Positions 2,101 to 29,165 of a DNA stretch of 33,788 nt are shown here, in pieces. Every line of letters begins with the position of its first letter. Position 1 is the stretch's first letter. The stretch spans positions 118,335,455 through 118,369,242 of the forward strand of contig NC_068982.1 of the NCBI RefSeq assembly GCF_001194135.2. The letters are read 5' to 3'. The notes beneath the pieces are model-generated. The model was not told the origin of the DNA, did no database searches, and saw only the letters and a list, made by a program, of their open reading frames with translations. This DNA is from Octopus bimaculoides (lineage: Eukaryota). Position numbers and translations under genes: made by a program.

Positions 2101-2935
2101 CAATGTGGGGTGAATAAGCTGTCGTCTAAGTTACGCGAAAATGAAAACAGAGCTGACATCTCATTTATACAGTTATATTTACCAAATTTACATAAAAATA
2201 TGTTGAAATAAAATCATTGTTGGCTTCAGTTTACTCGGAACCTCCAGTCGACTTCGGAATCCCCTGCAACACTTCTGGACGCTCTCCTTGTTTAAGTTGG
2301 TGAACGTTGCTATAATCCCTGCCGTTAGTTTATCTTTGATGTTACAATAATTTATGTTGGCCTCTCGCTCAACTGCGTGCCACACTTAATAATCAAAGAT
2401 GTTGCAGTCTGTGGAGTTTGGTGGCCAGGGGAAGTGGTCGCAGTAATTGTCTGAAAGCTGTGATTTGGTTATTCTGCTTCTGCGGCATAGTGCAGAATCC
2501 TGTTTCCAGACATTGTATCTACCAGCAGCCACCTTCTTCACCCAGGGCAGCACTACCTCCCCCAGGCACTTGGTGTAGGCCTCCGAGTTGAGTCTGAGAC
2601 CGTGTGGGAAGATGAATGGAGGCAAAACATCACCATCACTAGTGGTCACTGCAAAGACCATGATGTTGGCTGGATGTTTGATGTTTATCACTCTCGGTAC
2701 CTGTCCTCATATTGACACCCACACTCTCAGCGATGTTCGCATTGGTGCTTCCGGTGAGAATGCCAAGCAGTACAGTATGTCGCTTCCAAACTTCTGACAG
2801 AGTTAACTGCATCACGGTGCTGTTTTTCTCACAGACAATAACTATCCATCTGAGCCTAATACGAACAGTTCCTCTGGATAAGTGATATTCTACAAATATA
2901 GATAGCTGCTCAGCTATTATTTATTCACCTCAGTG
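2101..2935 (-). mobile_element. Internally deleted, decayed Tc1/mariner-superfamily (IS630-Tc1-mariner, maT-like) DNA transposon
   Basis: The minus strand reads MQLTLSEVWKRHTVLLGILTGSTNANIAESVGVNMRT (ATG at 2812, HTH-like), then ...KHPANIMVFAVTTSDGDVLPPFIFPHGLRLNSEAYTKCLGEVVLPWVKKVAAGRYNVWKQDSA...WPPNSTDCNIFDY*VWHAVERE...KLTAGIIATF. These are the QQD(G/S)A and WPP.SPD.NP.DY..W catalytic motifs. Imperfect TIRs: caatgtggggtgaataa (2101-2117) versus ttattcacctcagtg (2921-2935), the latter followed by TA. Confidence 0.9.
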
Positions 2936-9337: not shown

Positions 9338-9494
9338 TCTCCACCTTCACATACATTGTATTACCCAGATAGTCAGGTGTCGATCTATTATTTTTCACCT
9401 GTCGATCATTTAGTACTTTTCTAAAAGTTTCTCGATCAACCTTCTAGAGTCGTCTTTCCCCCGTACTCCCAGGCAGGAAGTTTTCATTTTTCAC

Positions 9495-9570
9495 TGTCCG
9501 CTTTACACTCCGGTGTCCGCTTTACACTTCGCTGTCCGCTTTACACTTCTCTGTCCGCTTTACACTCCGC
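9495..9570. repeat. 19-bp minisatellite x4 (tgtccgctttacactYYSS)
   Basis: Units tgtccgctttacactccgg, tgtccgctttacacttcgc, tgtccgctttacacttctc and tgtccgctttacactccgc start at 9495, 9514, 9533 and 9552. Confidence 0.97.
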
Positions 9571-10499
9571 TTTGAATAAGCTCAACGCTAGGTACTCTTG
9601 GCTAATTCCCACCAAATCCTCTCCTTCACCCCTATAGGCTCCACAACACTTACCAAAAAAACTTACTTTTTTGATATCTGCAGCTGCTTCCAAAAATCAA
9701 AATCCCCAGTTTTTAAAATTCTGCTGCTTCATATTTAAACTTTACTGGCAGATCATCCTCCTTTACACCACATTGTTTAAAACTCTCTCACACTCCAGAA
9801 TTGCCTAACACGGTACGTGTAAAAATAAACATTAGTGTGTTCCATTTCAAAGAAAGTAAACTTATCACACTCAGTGAAACGTTGCTATATTGCTCTCCCA
9901 TACAACATCTTCAGCGTTCTCCACCGGCTTATTTAATTCTCTCTGTGTTTCTTTCTCCTATTTTCTCTACAATGATTACTGTTATGTCATTGCTCTAAGA
10001 GGCAACAATTCTTTTGTCTCTTCGGCATGCAAAACTGTGAACATCTCTAATCTCCTGAGTCAGTAGCTTTCTTTCAGATCGTACCATACCGGCATGTTTT
10101 GGCGGCCTTCTTTTCTGTTCCAGTCTCATTTAAATCTGTCGTTTTCCAGGGTCCAGCTATGCCTCCCACTGTCTTTATACATGAAGGACACGCTTGTCAA
10201 CGCATTCGATAATTTCCACCCATATGCAAATGTCTATATTCTTTATACCTATTTAAACATTCTCGAGACGCAACCTAGACACTAAACACTAAATGTGGAC
10301 AACTTAAGAGAGGCTTTCATTTGGGAGCATGTCAATTTTATCTATTTTAACAGAGGTAATTCTCGAATGGTGTATAATCAAGTAAACGCCAATATCCCGC
10401 AACCATATAAACTTGAGCCTCCACTCAACAAAGGGTTTTGGAAACAGGATTATGAAGAATATAACAACTACACCATTGAATATAATATTAATGATGGTT

Positions 10500-10540
10500 G
10501 AATAATAACAACAATAACAACAACGACAACAATAATAATA
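10500..10540. repeat. Mixed (AAT)/(AAC) repeat at the 5' flank of the R4/Dong element
   Basis: aataataacaacaataacaacaacgacaacaataataata seen directly. Confidence 0.95.
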
Positions 10541-13020
10541 CAAGACAGTCTTTGTACTGGTCAAATTATGCAACGTGCTCGCAAACGCAAGTGGTCTGTT
10601 GATATGAACAAAAAAGCGATCCAGTGCCATGAAAAGGCCTTGCTAGACAAGAACAATAGCAAATGTAAAGCTGTCGGAAAAAGATCAATAGAACTTTGGA
10701 AGCAGCTGAGTATATTCGAGATTACTGAAAATAGACTTAGGAATCAGATAAGAGTAAATCTAAATAGAAGCTTTCTTAATGAGGTCCGGATTCAGACAAT
10801 CAGGAAAAGCTTCTGTAGCGGGGTGAACCTCTCTAGGAGAATAACGCAGCTGAACATCAGCGAATGCGTGGCCAAGATGTAATTGTAGTAGAGAAGAGGT
10901 CGGCCAATCAATATAATGTAGAAAACAATGAAATAAGAGAGGATATGACTGAGGAACAGAGAAGCCACAAGAAAAGACTCGAGGATATAATAATTACAAG
11001 AAGAGAGACTAAGCCGATTAATATAAGAAGCTTCGACTGCAACAACGTGAAATGTGCGACCAAAAAGTTGATGAGATTCTGAAATACATTCTGACAAAAG
11101 ATCTAACGGAAACAAGGGACTTGATCAGATCCATTTCAATTTTAATAGGTGAATTGGTTGGAAAGGAAAGTGGAAAGTAAAGAGACACAATGAGCCATGG
11201 TGGAAGGGGAAAATTAAAGGCGATATTCTTACTCTGGGTAAAGATCAGAGATACATAGAAGAGTGGTCCGAAGGGCAACGGAAAAATGGAAAAGAAAATG
11301 CAAGGGCACATCTTGATGCGAAGTAGCAAATAGAAAAGAAAGGTTTCAAAATTGTCTCCGAGATCCTAAAGCGACATGTGCGGGCTAAAACATTAAAGGT
11401 ACAGCACTACACTGATCGCATATCTCAGTTACAACAGAACTGGTTGTACATAAATAACCAGAAGCAGATTTTTAAAAGCGTAGGAGGAAATACACAAGAT
11501 AATGCACCTCCTCTTTATGGATGATTTAAAACTGTTCGCAGAATCAGAGCCTGAAATGGAGAGGCTGGTTGAGACTGAGCAAATGTGCATCAAGAATATA
11601 GGGATGGAATTCGGTATCTCGAAAGGTGTGGTGCTTACTTTGAAGCGGAGGAAAAGTGTGAATTGTAGGAGCATAGAATTGTCAAACGGAGAATGGAAGA
11701 ATGGGTATAAGTATCTTGGGATCCTGCAGCCGGACAATATCTTGCACAAAGAAATGAAAGACAAGGTCATCACTGCATATTTCAAGCTCTTCAAACTTCT
11801 GTTGAAATCAAAAATCAACTCAAGGAACCTTGTGACTGCTATCAACATCTTGGCGGTTGCTGTACTCAGCTATATTTCACCCATCCTGAAATGGACACAA
11901 GCGGAGATTGACCAACTCAATTGCAACTCAATTGCAACCCGAAAGACAATGACAAAACACGGTGCCCTCTATCTTAAGGCAAATAAACACAGGCTCTACA
12001 TGAAGAGAGGTAAAGGTGGGCATGAGCTGATTAGCGTACGGGAGTGCATCAAAGATGAAAGGAGAAACATGACAGAATCTTTGGTAAGCAGCAAACAAGA
12101 CCTACTATAGTATGCAGCTAGTGCAGAAGGAGTGAACAAAAATGGACTTGAGAGTGCTCATGAATTCTGATCAAGAACAGACAACGAGAGAGAAGAAACC
12201 CTTTTCTGTATGGAGTTATAGAGTAAGTTCCACCGTAAAACCAACAAATTAAATGACCAGGAAGCACCATGTAGGCGGCTCGACAACGGTGACCTGAAAA
12301 AGTATACCGAAAACTCAGGAATACATCAATGCCCAGGACCAGGCATTGAATACCAGCTCAGTAATATATATATATATATATATCACACAAGTGCAACGTA
12401 ACTCTGCAGGATGTGTGAAAAGAGGGTCGAAAGCGTGACTCACATAGTTAGTGCTTGTGAAATTCTTCCGCAGAAATATTACAAGCGCAGACACGACAAG
12501 GTAGCCCTTGCTTCTATGCCGTAACTATGGATATGAGGTTATAGGTGCTTGGTACCAACATACCCCGAAAAGCGATGGACGAAAAGTGGAAGGCAAAAAT
12601 ACTGGATATAGTAACCTTTACGGGGTAGAAACAAAAGTGTCTAATAATTGACGTAGCAGTGTCAGGAGATCAACATATCATCATGAAAGAGAGTGAAACT
12701 ATTGATAAATATGGAGACCTGAGAATTGAATTCGCTAAGATGTGGCAGCTACGAGAATCAAATATAAATGTAATCCCTTTTGTTATCAGAGCATTGGGTT
12801 CAATTCCACCCAATCTAAAAAAAAAAATATCTGCAAGCTTTAGAAATACCCTACAATCTAGATGTATTGCAAAAGTCGGCATTACTTGGAACTGCACACA
12901 TATCGTGTAAAGTAATGTCTGACTGAATTCCTTGTTGTGACCTGACGAACAGTACGAACCCTCGGTAGACACAATATCTTCAATCAACAACCTCATGACG
13001 TTGTATACTGTGCGACGTCT
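10541..13020 (+). mobile_element. Decayed R4/Dong-clade non-LTR retrotransposon (RT, CCHC zinc finger, restriction-like endonuclease) with internal deletions
   Basis: N-terminal RKRKWS...LWKQLSIFEITENRLRNQIR (10568-10882); NEPWWKGKI...KVQHYTDRISQLQQN (about 11190-11500); RT HLLFMDDLKLF...MEFGISK...GYKYLGIL...INSRNLVTAIN...RLYMKRGKGG (11502-12110); CRMCEKRVESVTHIVSAC...RHD (12405-12497); endonuclease KCLIIDVAVSGD...KESETIDKYGDL...VIPFVIRALG...LQKSALLGTAHI, stop at 12924-12926; short 3' UTR, then (AAT)n. Many stops and frameshifts. Confidence 0.93.
12364..12383. repeat. (AT)n inside the LINE coding region
   Basis: gtaatatatatatatatatatatcacac lies between the QDQALNT-like motif and the CCHC finger. 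Confidence 0.95.
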
Positions 13021-13050
13021 ATAATAACAATAATAATAATAATAATAATC

Positions 13051-13087
<37 letters not shown>

Positions 13088-13165
13088 TAACAATGATAAT
13101 AATGAGAAGAAAAAGAAGTAGAACAACAACAACATCGACGACGACAACAACAACAGCAAAAAGAA
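13021..13165. repeat. Compound (AAT)n/(AAG)/(AAC)/(GAC) repeat; 3' tail or target of the R4/Dong element
   Basis: Seen directly, starting immediately after the element's 3' end. Confidence 0.96.
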
Positions 13166-13640
13166 AATGATGATCATTAGATAATCGTCTTGTCACCTAC
13201 ATATAAGTGAAAGTCGTGGGATATGGTGTCAAGTATGTCACTGATATATAAAAGAATAAAAGTGGGAGACANNNNNNNNNNNNNNNNNNNNNNNNNNNNN
13301 NNNNNNNNNNNNNNNNNNNNNNNNNNNNNNNNNNNNNNNNNNNNNNNNNNNNNNNNNNNNNNNNNNNNNNNNNNNNNNNNNNNNNNNNNNNNNNNNNNNN
13401 NNNNNNNNNNNNNNNNNNNNNNNNNNNNNNNNNNNNNNNNNNNNNNNNNNNNNNNNNNNNNNNNNNNNNNNNNNNNNNNNNNNNNNNNNNNNNNNNNNNN
13501 NNNNNNNNNNNNNNNNNNNNNNNNNNNNNNNNNNNNNNNNNNNNNNNNNNNNNNNNNNNNNNNNNNNNNNNNNNNNNNNNNNNNNNNNNNNNNNNNNNNN
13601 NNNNNNNNNNNNNNNNNNNNNNNNNNNNNNNNNNNNNNNN

Positions 13641-13671
13641 AATAATAATATTAATAATAATAGTAGTAGTA

Positions 13672-13742
<71 letters not shown>

Positions 13743-14015
13743 AAGAAGAAGAAGAAGAAGAAGAAGAAGAAGAAGAAGAAGAAAAAGAAGAAGAAGAAGA
13801 AGAAGAAGACGAAGAAGAGGGCTGGACAAAAAGAAGATGAAAGATAACGAAAAGAAGGAGAAGAAAAAAGAAGAGGTGAGGAATCGGAGTAAAATGTAAA
13901 AGATAAACAAGAAATCGGACATGAATGAGGAAGAGAAGGAAGGGGAAGAGGAGGAGAAGGAGGAGGAGGGGAAGAGGAGGGGAAGATGAGGGGAAGATGA
14001 GGGGTGTGGAAGAAG
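13641..14015. repeat. Compound (AAT)n-(AGT)-(AAT)n-(AAG)n followed by a purine-rich GAG/GAA tract
   Basis: Seen directly; (AAG)n from about 13712 to 13810. Confidence 0.97.
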
Positions 14016-14059
14016 GAAAAGCTACTGCTGCTAGTGCACACACTACTGAAACATTTCGT

Positions 14060-14450
14060 CTTGCATGCACAGAGAAAGAACTATAATCATTATGTGGGAT
14101 TTTTAGGAGTGTGAATGCGAGACTTCAAACGCCATAGAGGGAAATTAATACGAGACGTTACTGTGGGATCTGCAAAAAAGAATGGATCACATGCCACATG
14201 TCAGAGTGGACAACAAGCAGATACTATGCATTGTGGTCGACGTAGCACGCCAATGGGACACTGAAATATAAAGAGAGGAAAAAGACAGCAAAAGATTATG
14301 ATAACGACATGAAATATAAAAACCTTAACAGGTGGGCCGGTGATTTGAAAGCAGAAAAATGTGACAACGATTTTTTTTTTAATGACCTTTAATATGGGGA
14401 TATCTGCAATGCAGAGAAACTGTCTTCTAAAGTATAAAATGCCCCTAGTT
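14060..14450 (+). mobile_element. Older, highly decayed R4/Dong-like 3' fragment (endonuclease region)
   Basis: 14161-14271 reads LWDLQKRMDHMPHVRVDNKQILCIVVDVARQWDTEI*, matching the LWD...D...C.I.DVA.P.D...KE pattern. KYKNL and ISAMQRNCLL follow, resembling the KY..L and QK..LLGT motifs. Similarity judged by eye. Confidence 0.55.
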
Positions 14451-14507
14451 CTAGACAAGAAGTGGTTCGACAGGAAGCACTTTTTAACTGGAAACAACGG
14501 AACATGC

Positions 14508-14581
<74 letters not shown>

Positions 14582-14650
14582 GTAGCAGCAGCAGCAGCAG
14601 CAGAAACAGCAACAGCAACAACAACAAGATCAACAGTGACAACAACACAA
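14508..14650. repeat. (CAT)n followed in register by (CAG)n and (CAA)-rich repeat
   Basis: Seen directly: (CAT)n 14508-14580, then cag tag cag cag...caa caa. Confidence 0.97.
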
Positions 14651-17276: not shown

Positions 17277-17502
17277 TCAGTGAGTTGGTAGGATCTTTAG
17301 CAGGGCCGGGGAAAAGGTTTAACGGCATTTCGTCCGAGTTCTACTTCAAATTTCGCCGAGGTCTACTTCGCCTTTCATCATTTTGGGAGCGATAAAATAA
17401 GTACCAGGTGGGCACTGAGATTGAGGTAATCACTAGAGTCAATGTAATCGACTTATTCCACTCCTGAAATTGCTGGCTTTGTGTCATAATTTCAAATCAT
17501 TA
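17277..17502 (+). mobile_element. tRNA-derived SINE, near full length and decayed
   Basis: A-box-like tggtaggatc and B-box-like gttctacttcaaatt, then cgccgaggtctacttcgcctttcatc...gataaaataagtaccagg...gtaatcgactt...cctgaaattgctggctttgtgtc. Resembles an abundant Octopus SINE (from recall). Confidence 0.8.
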
Positions 17503-17699: not shown

Positions 17700-17848
17700 N
17701 NNNNNNNNNNNNNNNNNNNNNNNNNNNNNNNNNNNNNNNNNNNNNNNNNNNNNNNNNNNNNNNNNNNNNNNNNNNNNNNNNNNNNNNNNNNNNNNNNNNN
17801 NNNNNNNNNNNNATATATATCAGAGGTTACTCCAAGTTATCAGTAGCA

Positions 17849-18580
17849 CTCGGGCTCATCACAGATTTCGCATAAGACACAAGCCTGCTGGAAGAATTTC
17901 ACGTTTTTCCGCAATATTTCTACCCTCAAATGGCTTACATTTTATATCTACCACTATGCATTTCTACATTTCCAAGTTAAGGATAAAAATAAAGCAACCC
18001 TGAAAAACTCAACTGATCTTTACACACAGACGCACAGAATAACGACAGTGGAGTGCACAACAAACATCAGCGATCTGACTGTAACCGTACACTTGGCAAG
18101 AGGTGCCAGTTAATCAGTTTCACCTACCAGGCTCGTTCGTACTAGCCCGAGTTGCTGGAAATTTTTTGTTACTTTAAGAATATTGAAGAACGGCAACTTT
18201 CCATAGATTAAAATTTAAATACAAATCTCTACAGAAATTTATTGTTTCAAGAAAATTTTGAATCTGGATTACTTTTGATTTTTATGATTAAAGATAAGAA
18301 CTCGGGCTGTAACTTCTTTTGAGACCAAGTCAAGCGCGTGTGAATGATGTCGACAGAACGTCTGCTATAAATAATATATGTTTGACACAGGGCAGATTTA
18401 AAACGACCACAAGACTAAATGAAAAATTAATGAAAATAAATGAACTGCGACTAGGCTCAATAAAAGGAGCCCGAGATACTGGCTGAAACTACATGTTTGA
18501 AATCAGTGTTGGCAGAAATTAATCTGCTTGCAAATACACTTTATGAAATTTATACTCGGGCTAAGCCCTTAAAGCCCAAG
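17849..18580. promoter_or_regulatory. Homotypic cluster of CTCGGGCT motifs; candidate protein-binding cluster, function unknown
   Basis: Exact copies at 17849(+), 18144(-), 18301(+), 18468(-) and 18555(+); a one-mismatch copy agcccaag at 18573(-). Four of the five extend to ACTCGGGCT. The motif is certain; the regulatory role is inference. Confidence 0.45.
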
Positions 18581-18584
18581 AACC

Positions 18585-18625
18585 GGAGTCACTACTATTT
18601 ATATATATATAACAGTAGTGACTCC
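18585..18625. repeat. Perfect 12-bp inverted repeat with a 17-nt AT-rich loop
   Basis: ggagtcactact (18585-18596) and agtagtgactcc (18614-18625). Confidence 0.95.
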
Positions 18626-18629
18626 AGTA

Positions 18630-18860
18630 TACTCTTTTACTCTTTTACTTGTTTCAGTCATTTGACTGCGGCCATGCTGGAGCACCGCCTTTAGTCGAGC
18701 AAATCGACCCCAGGACTTATTCTTTGTAAGCCTAGTACTTATTCTATTGGTCTCTTTTGCCGAACCGCTAAGTTACGGGGACGTAAACACACCACCATCG
18801 GTTGTCAAGCGATGTTGGGGGGGACAAACACAGACACACAAAACACACATGCACACACAC
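18630..18860 (-). mobile_element. SINE 3' half with (AAAAGAGT)n tail, running into a CA microsatellite and gap
   Basis: tactcttttactcttttacttgtttcagtcatttgactgcggccatgctggagcaccgcc...gtaagcctagtacttattctat...ccgctaagttacggggac; highly similar to the reverse complement of 22338-22485. Resembles a very abundant Octopus repeat (from recall). Confidence 0.88.
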
Positions 18861-22034: not shown

Positions 22035-22228
22035 GCGTGCGCACTCACACACATACACTCGTATACTACAGGCTTCTTTCCGTTTCTGTGTACCGAAACC
22101 ACTCAAAAGCCTTTGTCAGAATGAGGCTATACTAGAAGTCATCTACCCAAGGTGTCACGCGGTAAGACTGTACTCGGAACCATGTAGTTGGGAACCATAC
22201 TTCTTACCACCTAACTAAGCCAACGCCT
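22035..22228 (-). mobile_element. tRNA-derived SINE 5' half ending in a GT/CA-rich tract
   Basis: Reverse complement: aggcgttggcttagttaggtggtaagaagtatggttcccaactacatggttccgagtacagtc (tRNA-like head), then accttgggtagatgactt (CORE/Meta-like ccttgggcaag motif), ...gaaacggaaagaagcc..., then gtgtatgtgtgtg. Confidence 0.75.
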
Positions 22229-22337
22229 ATAAAGAAGATTAGTCTGATGAAACTTACAATCACGCGTTTTAAAGGGGATCGCGTCAAGTACGCGAATTTT
22301 TTTGCAGCAATGCAGGGAGAAGAGGGCGTATGCCTAT

Positions 22338-22485
22338 GTCCCCGAAACTTAGCTGTTCGGTAGAAACACCGATAGAATAAGTACCAGGCTTACAAACAAT
22401 AAGTCTGGGGACAATTTGTTCGACGAAAGGCGGTGATCCAGCATGGCCACAGTCAAATGACTGAAACGTGTAAAAGAGTAAAAGA
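22338..22485 (+). mobile_element. SINE 3' half, same family as 18630-18860
   Basis: gtccccgaaacttagctgttcgg...gatagaataagtaccaggcttac...aaggcggtgatccagcatggccacagtcaaatgactgaaacgtgtaaaagagtaaaaga. Confidence 0.88.
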
Positions 22486-26912: not shown

Positions 26913-26966
26913 ATCTTTTATCTTTTACTTGCTTCATTCAATTGATTGCAGCCATTCTGGAGTCAC
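26913..26966 (-). mobile_element. Short decayed SINE 3' fragment
   Basis: tcttttatcttttacttgcttcattcaattgattgcagccattctggag matches the start of 18630-18860. Confidence 0.7.
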
Positions 26967-27091: not shown

Positions 27092-27460
27092 ATGCATGCT
27101 ATTAGACAAAATAGCTGTATGACTTTGATAGGAGGCACAATGTCAAGAGTATTGTCAGTTTTCAGAGTTTGTTATATGAATAGTTTTAATAAAAAGAAAA
27201 CCTTTTAATATACCGGTATATTTTTTTTTTTAATTAAGAAGTGATTTTGTGTTAAATGGATGCATGCAATCAAACAAAATAGCTGTATATCTTTGATACG
27301 AGGCATAATTTCAAGTATTTTATCATTTCCCGGAGTTTGTTAAATGAATATTTTTGATAAGATGAATTTTTATTTTTTTAATACGGCCGCAGTCAAATGA
27401 CTGAAACAAGTTAGAGAATAAAACATTTAAACATTTTTTTTAAGAGGTGATTTTGTGGAT
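27092..27460. repeat. Diverged tandem duplication, period 168 bp
   Basis: atgcatgc...acaaaatagctgtat...ctttgata.gaggca.aat.tcaag...gagtttgtta.atgaata starts at 27092 and 27260; gtgattttgtg at 27241 and 27447. Confidence 0.92.
27385..27423 (+). mobile_element. 39-bp SINE 3'-terminal fragment inside the second duplication unit
   Basis: ggccgcagtcaaatgactgaaacaagt is identical to the reverse complement of part of 18630-18860 and is followed by an A-rich tail. Confidence 0.85.
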
Positions 27461-27759: not shown

Positions 27760-29165
27760 ATGTCCCCCAAAAATACGCGACTGAAAAGATCACTTAGCAG
27801 TTAAAGCACGACGACAGAGTGAAATACGGGCAACTGAATCAGATGAAACCAGGGCAAAGCGACTGAGACAAGTATCTGAATACGCACGGGGTCGTAGACA
27901 TGATTATGTTTTCACTACACATAAGTGACTGGCGAGGGTATCTCGAGATGTGTCTTCAAAAGAAGACACTGAAGCAGCTTTCACCATATGTGACTCTTTA
28001 GCTACCGACTGATAATCAGTATCAAATGGGAAGTCAAACATCAGTGAGATACAAACAGAAACACCAGATCCAAAACACTGAGTGCTGAGAGACGACACAG
28101 AATATTTAGAGCAGAAGTACAAACTAGGAAGAATTCTGTTAAAGGATTAGCAATGAAAGCCAGCTCCGATAATTTCCAAGAACAGGCTGTCCTGTCTATT
28201 GTACAGTCACATTATGCAGGGAGGCTCTTTGACCATGTTTGTTCATATTGCAATGCTTCAGGTGGGCTGCTGAATTGAAATCTCTATGTTGCTTTGAGGG
28301 GAATGTGAAACTTGACAATCTGCACCCCCCTCCACCAAATATTCTTAAATACTTCGATGTTACACAAACAAGAAACAATTTCCTACAAATAAACGTCCAT
28401 TTAACAATGCACTAGCATTGCCTTCTCTGAGTTGCCAAGAAATCAGAGCCCCAGAATTTAGACCTACATCTAAGGTGCAGGGAAGAGTTTATGACATGAT
28501 TGGGACGCTACTTCCAAACGACAACATTCCAAAATTTGCTCGAATCTACTTCAATGATACAGATAACGAACTTGAGAATCGTAAGCGGCATAGAAATTTA
28601 AACAGTGAAATTTTGAAAGCAATAGAGGATGACTTGCATCGTTACAGTGCATACATGTAGTTTTAGAGTAGCTATTGAAACTGATGCTTTAAGGGATTTC
28701 GATATTGTTCTATACGCTGACAGGAATAACAAACCCTCTCATTCACATTGTCGAACTTAGAATCTTCAAATGGATTCAGAAATTGCTGCTATTTTGCCAG
28801 GGGAAAGTGCTGGCCACTTGGATGTTATTATTCACAGAAGAGATGGTAATCTACAAAGAATCCATCAGTTGCATCGGTCATATGATCTTCTGCATTATGT
28901 ACTGCTATTTCCCCGAGGGGAGGATGGATATCAGACAGGTCTGTAATGAATAGACAATCGCAAACTTTCTGTCACTGATTTTTATTATTATCGTTTTAAA
29001 GTGAGGGAACGGGATTTCGACACTGTGATGAAACAATATGCTGTAGATGATCAGGCTAAAACAGTCGTTCATGCAAGGATTTGAGGGTATTTGATGGTAT
29101 TGTATACCAAACATTTCAAGACGCATGAAATGCAGATATAAATGCATATATAAGACTCGGTTACA
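27760..29165 (+). mobile_element. Decayed Helitron RepHel gene, N-terminal portion only
   Basis: With frameshifts: MSPK...; RATESDETRAKRLRQ (STPR-like); CSYCNA/RWAAELKSLCCFEGNVKL..PPP; KRPFNNALA...KVQGRVYDMIGTLLP...PKFARIYF.D; EIAAILPG...RRDGNLQRIHQLHRSYDLLHYVLLFPRGEDG; FYYYRFKVR; KQYAVD; YQTFQDA...G. This is the motif order of the Helitron_like_N region. It ends before the Rep HUH motifs. Confidence 0.92.

What the first reader, a model, noticed from the sequence alone, without database searches (positions are those of the whole stretch)
17849..18580. Five alternating-orientation copies of a CpG-containing 8-9-mer (ACTCGGGCT) in about 715 bp of unique-looking DNA
Exact CTCGGGCT occurs at 17849(+), 18144(-), 18301(+), 18468(-) and 18555(+), with a CpG-decayed sixth copy at 18573(-). 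The strands alternate strictly and the flanks are unrelated, so this is not a tandem repeat. With about one-third GC, a rough estimate is under 0.01 expected copies in this span, and I noticed none elsewhere in the window. Retained CpGs suggest protection from methylation decay. It is a candidate homotypic binding cluster (enhancer or insulator, possibly for one of the expanded cephalopod C2H2 zinc-finger proteins) or a set of transposase-binding subterminal repeats. I do not recognise the motif. This is the strongest unexplained signal in the window.
Basis: partly seen in the sequence, partly recalled or inferred. Interest (0 to 1): 0.7.

Follow-up and report, generated by a model that had tools for sequence, protein, structure and literature searches.

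The report
Clustered 9-mer repeats in octopus non-coding DNA
Five exact copies of an 8-9 base motif really do sit, in alternating orientation, within 715 bases of non-coding octopus DNA and cannot be chance, but they are most likely protein-binding repeats of an uncharacterised transposon remnant, not a new kind of regulatory element, and these tools cannot settle which.

Summary
CTCGGGCT occurs exactly five times in the window, all between 17849 and 18562, with strands +,-,+,-,+. A one-mismatch copy (CTTGGGCT) lies at 18573(-). About 0.004 copies are expected in that span. Random models predict about 1e-7 such clusters in a 2.7-Gb genome.

The spacers are unrelated. There is no tandem repeat, ORF, protein homologue, Rfam family or tRNA. 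The DNA is octopod: it is contiguous with a SINE that is 92% identical to an Octopus bimaculoides copy.

CpG observed/expected is 0.82 here against 0.76 window-wide, and under 10% of octopus CpGs are methylated, mostly in gene bodies.

Exact short motifs in both orientations, in otherwise unrelated DNA, fit repeated binding sites for one DNA-binding protein. My best guess (0.4) is the internal or subterminal repeats of a non-autonomous cut-and-paste transposon. Hermes subterminal repeats, the Harbinger 9-bp Myb-like sites and the Emigrant MITE are the known parallels. A host regulatory cluster is the main rival (0.25).

Evidence for terminal inverted repeats is weak. No cephalopod genome could be searched, so copy number and cross-species conservation, the decisive tests, remain undone.

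The parts
17848..17856 (+). Motif copy M1, ACTCGGGCT
   Evidence: Exact match
18144..18152 (-). Motif copy M2, ACTCGGGCT (AGCCCGAGT on the + strand)
   Evidence: Exact match
18300..18308 (+). Motif copy M3, ACTCGGGCT
   Evidence: Exact match
18468..18476 (-). Motif copy M4, TCTCGGGCT (8-mer exact; position -1 is T instead of A)
18554..18562 (+). Motif copy M5, ACTCGGGCT
   Evidence: Exact match
18573..18580 (-). Degenerate copy M6, CTTGGGCT (the CpG has become TpG), 10 nt from M5 and inverted relative to it
18322..18330 (-). Degenerate inverted copy ACTTGGTCT (7/9), 13 nt 3' of M3
   Evidence: The 3' flanks of the five copies hold inverted-motif-like 9-mers more often than chance (summed matches 30 against 23.3 +/- 1.75, P=2.5e-4), while the 5' flanks do not (24).
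18129..18134 (+). AGGCTC hexamer exactly 9 nt before M2. The same hexamer sits at the same offset before M4 (18453-18458).
   Evidence: Read directly from the sequence. M2/M4 flank identity is 18/40, P=0.012 uncorrected. This is suggestive only.
18453..18458 (+). AGGCTC hexamer exactly 9 nt before M4
18582..18628 (.). Strong palindrome, GGAGTCACTACT-(TA)n loop-AGTAGTGACTCC, immediately after M6. It is a possible right boundary or terminal structure of the element.
   Evidence: inverted repeat I1.: -12.9 kcal/mol, z=-6.9, 0 of 200 shuffles as stable.
17821..17834 (+). CAGAGGTTACTCCA next to a (TA)n run at the left contig edge. It matches 11/14 of the right palindrome arm CAGTAGTGACTCCA and is a weak candidate terminal repeat.
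   Evidence: (direct repeat D4). Local alignment of the two ends scores no better than random 60-mers.
18633..18860 (+). Octopus SINE copy bounding the region on the right and cut off by the gap
   Evidence: Copies elsewhere in the window. Up to 92% identical to a copy on O. bimaculoides chromosome CM046617.1.
17700..17812 (.). Assembly gap (113 N) bounding the region on the left, inside (TA)n/(TG)n microsatellites

Best explanation
The six sites are repeated binding sites for one sequence-specific DNA-binding protein. They are carried on a roughly 0.8-kb non-coding element that is most likely a non-autonomous cut-and-paste DNA transposon or its remnant. In such elements, short motifs of 4-12 bp are scattered in both orientations through otherwise unrelated subterminal DNA. 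They recruit several copies of the transposase, or of an accessory Myb/SANT-, BED- or THAP-type protein, to assemble the transposition complex. Shown here: the motif cluster is non-random, it occurs in both orientations, the spacers are unrelated, the DNA is non-coding, it is octopod, and it lies among microsatellites and a SINE. Inferred: that a protein binds the motif, that the element is or was mobile, and where its ends lie.
For: The cluster cannot arise by chance or base composition. Five 8-mers are identical, with 44 of 45 positions identical across the 9-mers, while the spacers show no detectable similarity. That pattern means either selection on the motif itself or very recent common origin, and it is the anatomy of transposon subterminal repeats. 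The region has no ORF or protein homologue, no RNA family and no tRNA. Degenerate inverted copies lie 9-25 nt 3' of the exact copies (P=2.5e-4), resembling the paired or palindromic sites seen in known transposon ends. A strong palindrome with a TA loop (z=-6.9) and TA-rich flanks sit at the right edge. A weakly similar 14-mer sits next to (TA)n at the left edge. The right palindrome arm contains ACTCCGGTT, 7/9 identical to the motif, in the way Sleeping Beauty and Emigrant subterminal repeats echo the inner half of the terminal inverted repeat (PMC1636448). Published precedents exist. Hermes has 17 and 14 short subterminal repeats in both orientations, some of them palindromic pairs, bound by BED domains (PMC10368747). 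The Harbinger3_DR Myb-like protein binds a 9-bp subterminal motif (PMC9710019). The only published use of this exact 8-mer as a motif is the binding site AGCCCGAG of a single-repeat Myb protein in maize (PMC10654321). As a prior, about 66% of the O. vulgaris genome is repeats, including many Tc1/mariner, hAT, unclassified TIR and MITE families (PMC13282606).
Against: No second copy of the region was found, but only about 62 kb of octopus DNA could be searched. The terminal inverted repeat evidence is weak: alignment of the two ends scores 12 against a null mean of 11.8. No target-site duplication can be read in the TA-rich, gap-bounded flanks. No transposase is nearby. The mini-hairpins formed with the degenerate partners are not thermodynamically significant. 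Five or six sites spread over 700 bp is sparser than in the classic examples.
Confidence: 0.4

Rival explanations
1. The region is a host cis-regulatory module, such as an enhancer, silencer or insulator, built as a homotypic cluster of sites for one sequence-specific factor. That factor could be a Myb/SANT/MADF-type or multi-zinc-finger protein. Occupancy at several sites would give cooperative or graded regulation of a nearby gene.
For: The non-random cluster and unrelated spacers are the same as for the best explanation. The DNA is unique in everything that could be searched. The mix of perfect sites with CpG-decayed or degenerate sites resembles binding-site turnover. A single-repeat Myb protein binds exactly AGCCCGAG in maize (PMC10654321).
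Against: Transcription-factor sites in enhancers are usually degenerate, so five identical 8-mers point to common descent more than to independent evolution. No annotated exon or protein match lies within about 10 kb on either side. CpG content is ordinary. The neighbourhood is microsatellites, SINEs and retroelement debris.
Confidence: 0.25
2. The cluster is a non-functional by-product of local mutation. One possibility is a series of old local direct and inverted duplications of a segment carrying the motif. Another is repeated templated insertions. In either case the identical cores would have survived by luck or gene conversion.
For: The +/- pairs (M1/M2, M3/M4, M5/M6) could be three copies of a two-motif unit. 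M2 and M4 share AGGCTC at -9 and T-R-CTGG after the core.
Against: If the spacers have diverged beyond recognition, neutral decay should have hit the 45 core positions too. Only one differs, and at 30% or more divergence the chance of that is about 1e-7. The M2/M4 flank similarity does not survive multiple-test correction.
Confidence: 0.15
3. The region is a structure-forming element. The inverted 9-mers and the palindrome would pair in single-stranded DNA or in a transcript to form a cruciform or long hairpin, serving as a recombination or replication signal or as a source of double-stranded RNA.
For: Folding the 820 nt as DNA pairs M1 with M4 and M2 with M3, with z=-2.2. The palindrome at 18582-18628 is very stable.
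Against: The stems are only 9-10 bp with no extended complementarity. The individual mini-hairpins have z-scores from -1.9 to +1.2. Rfam gives no match.
Confidence: 0.07
4. The cluster is an assembly or contamination artefact of the small gap-bounded contig.
For: The cluster lies on a 1048-bp contig between two runs of N.
Against: The same contig runs directly into an octopus SINE that is 92% identical to a copy on an O. bimaculoides chromosome. An 8-9-nt motif is shorter than any assembler k-mer. From my own knowledge it matches no common adaptor. Scans of the bacterial, viral and metagenome collections found nothing.
Confidence: 0.03

Closest known systems
Subterminal repeats of hAT transposons (Hermes STRs; Ac/Ds AAACGG repeats)
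   Same: A short motif is repeated many times in both orientations in otherwise unrelated non-coding DNA near the element ends. Some copies form palindromic pairs. The motif is bound by the transposase BED domain (PMC10368747, PMC3260210).
   Different: The hAT motifs are 4-6 bp and denser, with 14-17 per end. Here the motif is 8-9 bp with only 5-6 copies. No hAT-type terminal repeat or 8-bp target-site duplication could be identified, and no other copies are known.
PIF/Harbinger elements and their Tourist-like MITEs
   Same: The Myb/SANT/MADF-like accessory protein of Harbinger3_DR binds a 9-bp motif in the subterminal regions (PMC9710019). The only published motif identical to this 8-mer is bound by a single-repeat Myb protein (PMC10654321). 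The flanks here are AT-rich.
   Different: No TWA target-site duplication or Harbinger-type terminal repeat could be read, and no Harbinger genes are nearby. The maize link is a coincidence of sequence across kingdoms. It is a lead, not a test.
pogo-like / Tc1-mariner MITEs with subterminal motifs (Emigrant/Lemi1; Sleeping Beauty IR/DR)
   Same: These have TA-rich insertion sites and subterminal repeats that echo the inner half of the terminal repeat and lie in either orientation (PMC1636448). Here ACTCCGGTT in the right palindrome arm is 7/9 identical to the motif.
   Different: Those elements have 2-3 sites per end, close to the tips. Here the sites span the whole 0.7 kb. Similarity between the two ends is not above chance.
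Homotypic clusters of transcription-factor binding sites in animal enhancers
   Same: Several sites for one factor lie within a few hundred bp of unique non-coding DNA, in both orientations.
   Different: Enhancer sites are normally degenerate, not identical. No conservation, chromatin or nearby-gene evidence is available here.

Membership tests
Non-autonomous cut-and-paste DNA transposon with subterminal repeats | A short motif repeated in both orientations within non-coding subterminal DNA | tested here: met
   There are five exact copies and at least two degenerate ones, on alternating strands, with unrelated spacers.
Non-autonomous cut-and-paste DNA transposon with subterminal repeats | Terminal inverted repeats at both ends | tested here: inconclusive
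   The left 14-mer matches the right palindrome arms at 11/14 (direct) and 9/13 (inverted). Local alignment of the ends scores 12 against a null mean of 11.8. The left edge abuts an assembly gap.
Non-autonomous cut-and-paste DNA transposon with subterminal repeats | Target-site duplication flanking the element | tested here: inconclusive
   Both candidate ends lie in (TA)n runs, so a TA or TWA duplication can be neither shown nor excluded.
Non-autonomous cut-and-paste DNA transposon with subterminal repeats | Multiple dispersed copies in the genome | not testable with these tools
   No copy was found in the rest of the window or in 41 kb of O. bimaculoides chromosome. The public collections that can be scanned hold no octopus DNA, because the SINE control found nothing.
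Non-autonomous cut-and-paste DNA transposon with subterminal repeats | A cognate transposase or accessory protein that binds the motif | not tested
   This needs a genome-wide search for the autonomous partner and binding assays.
Homotypic transcription-factor site cluster (enhancer or insulator) | Several sites for one motif within a few hundred bp of unique DNA | tested here: met
Homotypic transcription-factor site cluster (enhancer or insulator) | Motif cores conserved better than spacers in orthologous loci | not testable with these tools
   No orthologous locus could be reached. Six-frame ORFs of the region and of its 7.4-28 kb neighbourhood hit no protein in the database.
Homotypic transcription-factor site cluster (enhancer or insulator) | Match to a known factor's motif; open chromatin | not testable with these tools
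   No motif library or chromatin data are available. The full-text search found the 8-mer as a motif only for maize ZmRL6.
Tandem repeat / minisatellite | Head-to-tail copies of a unit with related sequence between the cores | tested here: not met
   TRF reports nothing in 17813-18632. The spacers are unrelated and the orientation alternates.
CpG-protected (unmethylated island-like) region | CpG observed/expected clearly above the surroundings | tested here: not met
   The ratio is 0.82 against 0.76 window-wide, and there are 10-14 CpG per 400 bp against a mean of 9.5 +/- 3.4. Octopus intergenic CpGs are mostly unmethylated anyway (PMC9476566).
Known structured RNA (Rfam) or tRNA-derived element | A covariance-model or tRNA match | tested here: not met
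   There were no gathering-threshold hits. The best E-value hit was 0.56, on the palindrome. No tRNA was found.

The most novel reading that the evidence does not exclude
The region is a single-copy, lineage-specific cis-regulatory or boundary element. Its identical ACTCGGGCT sites, arranged in alternating orientation, would be held by selection for a cephalopod DNA-binding protein, for example a domesticated Myb/SANT-, BED- or THAP-type factor or an expanded C2H2 zinc-finger protein.
Probability: 0.18. Interest if true: 0.55.

Novelty: new member of a known kind. Interest (0 to 1): 0.3.

Why it matters
If it is a transposon remnant, it is one more uncharacterised family in a genome that is about two-thirds repeats. 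Its use would be in repeat annotation, and it would supply a ready-made binding motif for finding the autonomous partner. If it proves single-copy with conserved cores, it would be one of very few candidate cis-regulatory modules in a cephalopod with an explicit, testable binding motif. That motif would give direct access to the protein that reads it, through pull-down or DAP-seq.

Tried and rejected
1. Chance or base composition: rejected.
2. Tandem or decayed larger repeat: the spacers are unrelated.
3. Coding sequence: the longest open frames are 88 and 76 aa. An 835-aa concatenate of all frames of 28 aa or more hit nothing among 5.8 billion proteins. Exact-product look-ups of two ORFs found nothing.
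4. RNA gene: no Rfam or tRNA match.
5. Reaching orthologous loci through a neighbouring gene failed. The reverse-transcriptase ORF is not on record. Its best named relative is an O. bimaculoides protein at 68% identity, at another locus. A 4855-aa concatenate of ORFs from 7.4-28 kb hit nothing.
6. Collection scans with a three-motif spaced pattern found nothing in the metagenome, GTDB and IMG/VR collections. The SINE control also found nothing, so these negatives say nothing about cephalopods.
7. Terminal inverted repeats: the visual similarity between the ends is not above a random-60-mer null.
8. Mini-hairpins formed from each motif and its degenerate partner are not significant when folded.
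9. CpG protection: rejected (PMC9476566).
10. Literature search for the 9-mer inside longer strings returned only unrelated primers and oligos.
11. My recalled resemblances to THAP1, AP-2, GCM, Zeste and 7SL/Alu motifs did not fit on inspection and were dropped.
12. My guess of a Helitron-type ORF at 28-29 kb got no Pfam support.

Full report
**Observation.** The 8-mer CTCGGGCT occurs exactly five times in the 33,788-base window. All five lie between 17849 and 18562, with strands +,-,+,-,+. The window-wide expectation is 0.17, and no shuffle out of 100 reached five. Four copies share the 9-mer ACTCGGGCT and the fifth reads TCTCGGGCT. A sixth copy at 18573-18580(-) reads CTTGGGCT, differing by a C-to-T change at the CpG. 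Apart from a 19-bp tandem repeat at 9494-9571, this is the only complex 8-mer with five copies inside any 750 bp of the window. In 300 order-3 Markov simulations of the window, none produced four or more copies of a GC-rich complex 8-mer within 750 bp. Models of order 0 to 3, trained on the rest of the window plus 41 kb of octopus chromosome, give about 0.004 expected copies in the span. They give P(5 or more) of about 1e-14 and about 1e-7 such clusters per 2.7 Gb.

**Provenance.** The cluster lies on a 1048-bp contig (17813-18860) between two runs of N. That contig continues directly into a SINE with other copies in the window. The SINE is up to 92% identical to a copy on Octopus bimaculoides chromosome CM046617.1, which I fetched as L001. 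A retroelement at 11.5-13.0 kb is 78% identical over 1550 bp to a copy in L001. Its reverse-transcriptase ORF is 68% identical to O. bimaculoides LOC106876884. The window is therefore octopod DNA, and the region is neither contamination nor an adaptor artefact.

**What the region is not.**
- It is not a tandem repeat.
- The four long spacers show no similarity to each other in either orientation; 12 tests gave one nominal P of 0.01.
- Flank identity anchored on the motif is at background. The exception is M2/M4 at 18/40, P=0.012 before correcting for 15 pairs.
- It does not code for protein. The longest open frames are 88 and 76 aa, and a concatenate of all frames of 28 aa or more hit nothing among 5.8 billion proteins.
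- No Rfam family or tRNA matches.
- It has no similarity to the rest of the window or to L001 by blastn or nhmmer.

**CpG argument.** CpG observed/expected is 0.82 in the contig and 0.76 in the window. CpG counts per 400 bp are 10-14 against a window mean of 9.5 +/- 3.4. [quoted passage not shown] Retained CpGs are the default state and do not indicate protection.

**Finer anatomy.**
- The 40 nt on the 3' side of the five exact copies contain 9-mers resembling the inverted motif more often than random sites do. The summed best matches are 30 against 23.3 +/- 1.75 (P=2.5e-4), while the 5' sides score 24. The clearest cases are AGACCAAGT 13 nt after M3 and AGCCCAAG, which is M6, 10 nt after M5. 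Both have lost the CpG.
- M2 and M4 share AGGCTC exactly 9 nt before the core and T-R-CTGG after it, but this does not survive multiple-test correction.
- The mini-hairpins these partners could form are not thermodynamically significant, with z between -1.9 and +1.2.
- Immediately after M6 lies a strong palindrome: GGAGTCACTACT, a (TA)n loop, then AGTAGTGACTCC. It folds at -12.9 kcal/mol with z=-6.9.
- A 14-mer next to the (TA)n run at the left contig edge, CAGAGGTTACTCCA, matches 11/14 of the palindrome arm.
- The inner part of the left palindrome arm reads ACTCCGGTT, 7/9 identical to the motif.
- These features hint at an element of about 780 bp (17821-18598) with TA-rich flanks. However, a local alignment of the two ends scores no better than random 60-mers: 12 against a null mean of 11.8. 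I treat the terminal repeats as unproven.

**Interpretation.** Forty-four of 45 core positions are identical, while the intervening DNA is unrelated. That cannot be neutral decay of an old duplication. It means selection on the motif itself, or a very recent common origin. The simplest mechanism is a repeated binding site for one DNA-binding protein. Two settings produce this anatomy.

- *Transposon ends.* The first setting is the internal or subterminal region of cut-and-paste transposons and their non-autonomous derivatives.
  - Hermes carries 17 and 14 short subterminal repeats in both orientations, some in palindromic pairs, bound by BED domains (PMC10368747).
  - The Harbinger3_DR Myb-like protein binds a 9-bp subterminal motif (PMC9710019).
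  - The pogo-like Lemi1 proteins bind subterminal motifs of the Emigrant MITE, which echo the inner half of the terminal repeat and occur in either orientation (PMC1636448).
- *Host regulatory cluster.* The second setting is a homotypic cluster of transcription-factor sites.

I favour the transposon reading at 0.4 for three reasons. Identical sites, as opposed to degenerate ones, suggest descent from a selected master copy. The surroundings are microsatellites, SINEs and retroelement debris, with no exon detectable within about 10 kb. About two-thirds of an octopus genome is repeats, with many unclassified TIR and MITE families (PMC13282606). The host regulatory reading gets 0.25, a non-functional mutational by-product 0.15, a structural DNA or RNA element 0.07, and an artefact 0.03.

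**Literature lead.** A whole-word full-text search found this exact 8-mer as a named motif only once. It is the DAP-seq and EMSA site AGCCCGAG of the maize single-repeat Myb protein ZmRL6 (PMC10654321). This shows that a Myb/SANT-type domain can read the sequence, and that domain is the type used by Harbinger accessory proteins. It is a cross-kingdom coincidence of sequence, so I count it as a lead, not a test.

**Limits.** No cephalopod genome can be searched by DNA with these tools. Scans of the metagenome, GTDB and IMG/VR collections with a spaced three-motif pattern found nothing. An octopus SINE control also found nothing, so those negatives are uninformative. Attempts to reach orthologous loci through neighbouring proteins failed. 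Copy number in the genome and conservation across Octopus species are the two decisive tests, and both remain to be done.

**Verdict.** The feature is real and statistically striking. It is most likely an uncharacterised member of a known kind, namely repeated protein-binding motifs of a transposon-derived element. The more interesting host-regulatory reading keeps a probability of about one in five. The interest score is moderate to low until copy number and conservation are known.

Noticed in passing
window 18582-18628: A near-perfect palindrome, GGAGTCACTACT, a (TA)n loop, then AGTAGTGACTCC. It folds at -12.9 kcal/mol with z=-6.9. It is wedged between the last motif copy and a SINE. There is a weak mir-276-like Rfam hit (E=0.56), which is not significant.
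   Followed up: partly
window 18633-18860(+), 22335-22485(-), 26914-26962(+), 27385-27423(-): Four full or partial copies of an octopus SINE (core GTTTCAGTCATTTGACTGCGGCCATGCTGGAGCACCGCC). The window copies are 86-92% identical to each other, and the best match to a copy on O. bimaculoides chromosome CM046617.1 (L001) is 92%.
   Followed up: partly
window about 10500-12980 (+): A degraded retroelement. The ORF at 11484-12107 has a weak RVT_1 match and is 68% identical to O. bimaculoides LOC106876884. The DNA is 78% identical over 1550 bp to L001 10196-11701.
   Followed up: partly
window 17290-17430; also 22062-22235: Two short interspersed repeats of unknown class, each with 2-4 copies (70-87% identity) in the 41-kb O. 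bimaculoides locus L001. The first contains a 22-bp unit repeated 1.9 times at 17327-17369.
   Followed up: no
window 9494-9571: A 19-bp tandem repeat (CTGTCCGCTTTACACTCCG) with 4.1 copies and 89% matches. It is the only other complex 8-mer cluster in the window.
   Followed up: no
window 13021-14626: A dense run of trinucleotide microsatellites, (ATA)28, (AAT)25, (AAG)35 and (CAT)25, around an assembly gap. The window holds seven gaps totalling 2480 N, and most abut microsatellites.
   Followed up: no
window 2389-2706 (-): A 106-aa open frame with faint similarity to the catalytic domain of Sleeping Beauty transposase (PDB 5cr4, E=0.41) and no Pfam hit. It may be a Tc1-like relic, but this is unproven.
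   Followed up: partly
window 27785-27925 (+): A 47-aa open frame with a just-below-threshold Pfam match to the STPR DNA-binding repeat (E=1.5e-5; 25.7 bits against a cut-off of 27). The neighbouring ORFs at 28048-28950 gave no family match.
   Followed up: no
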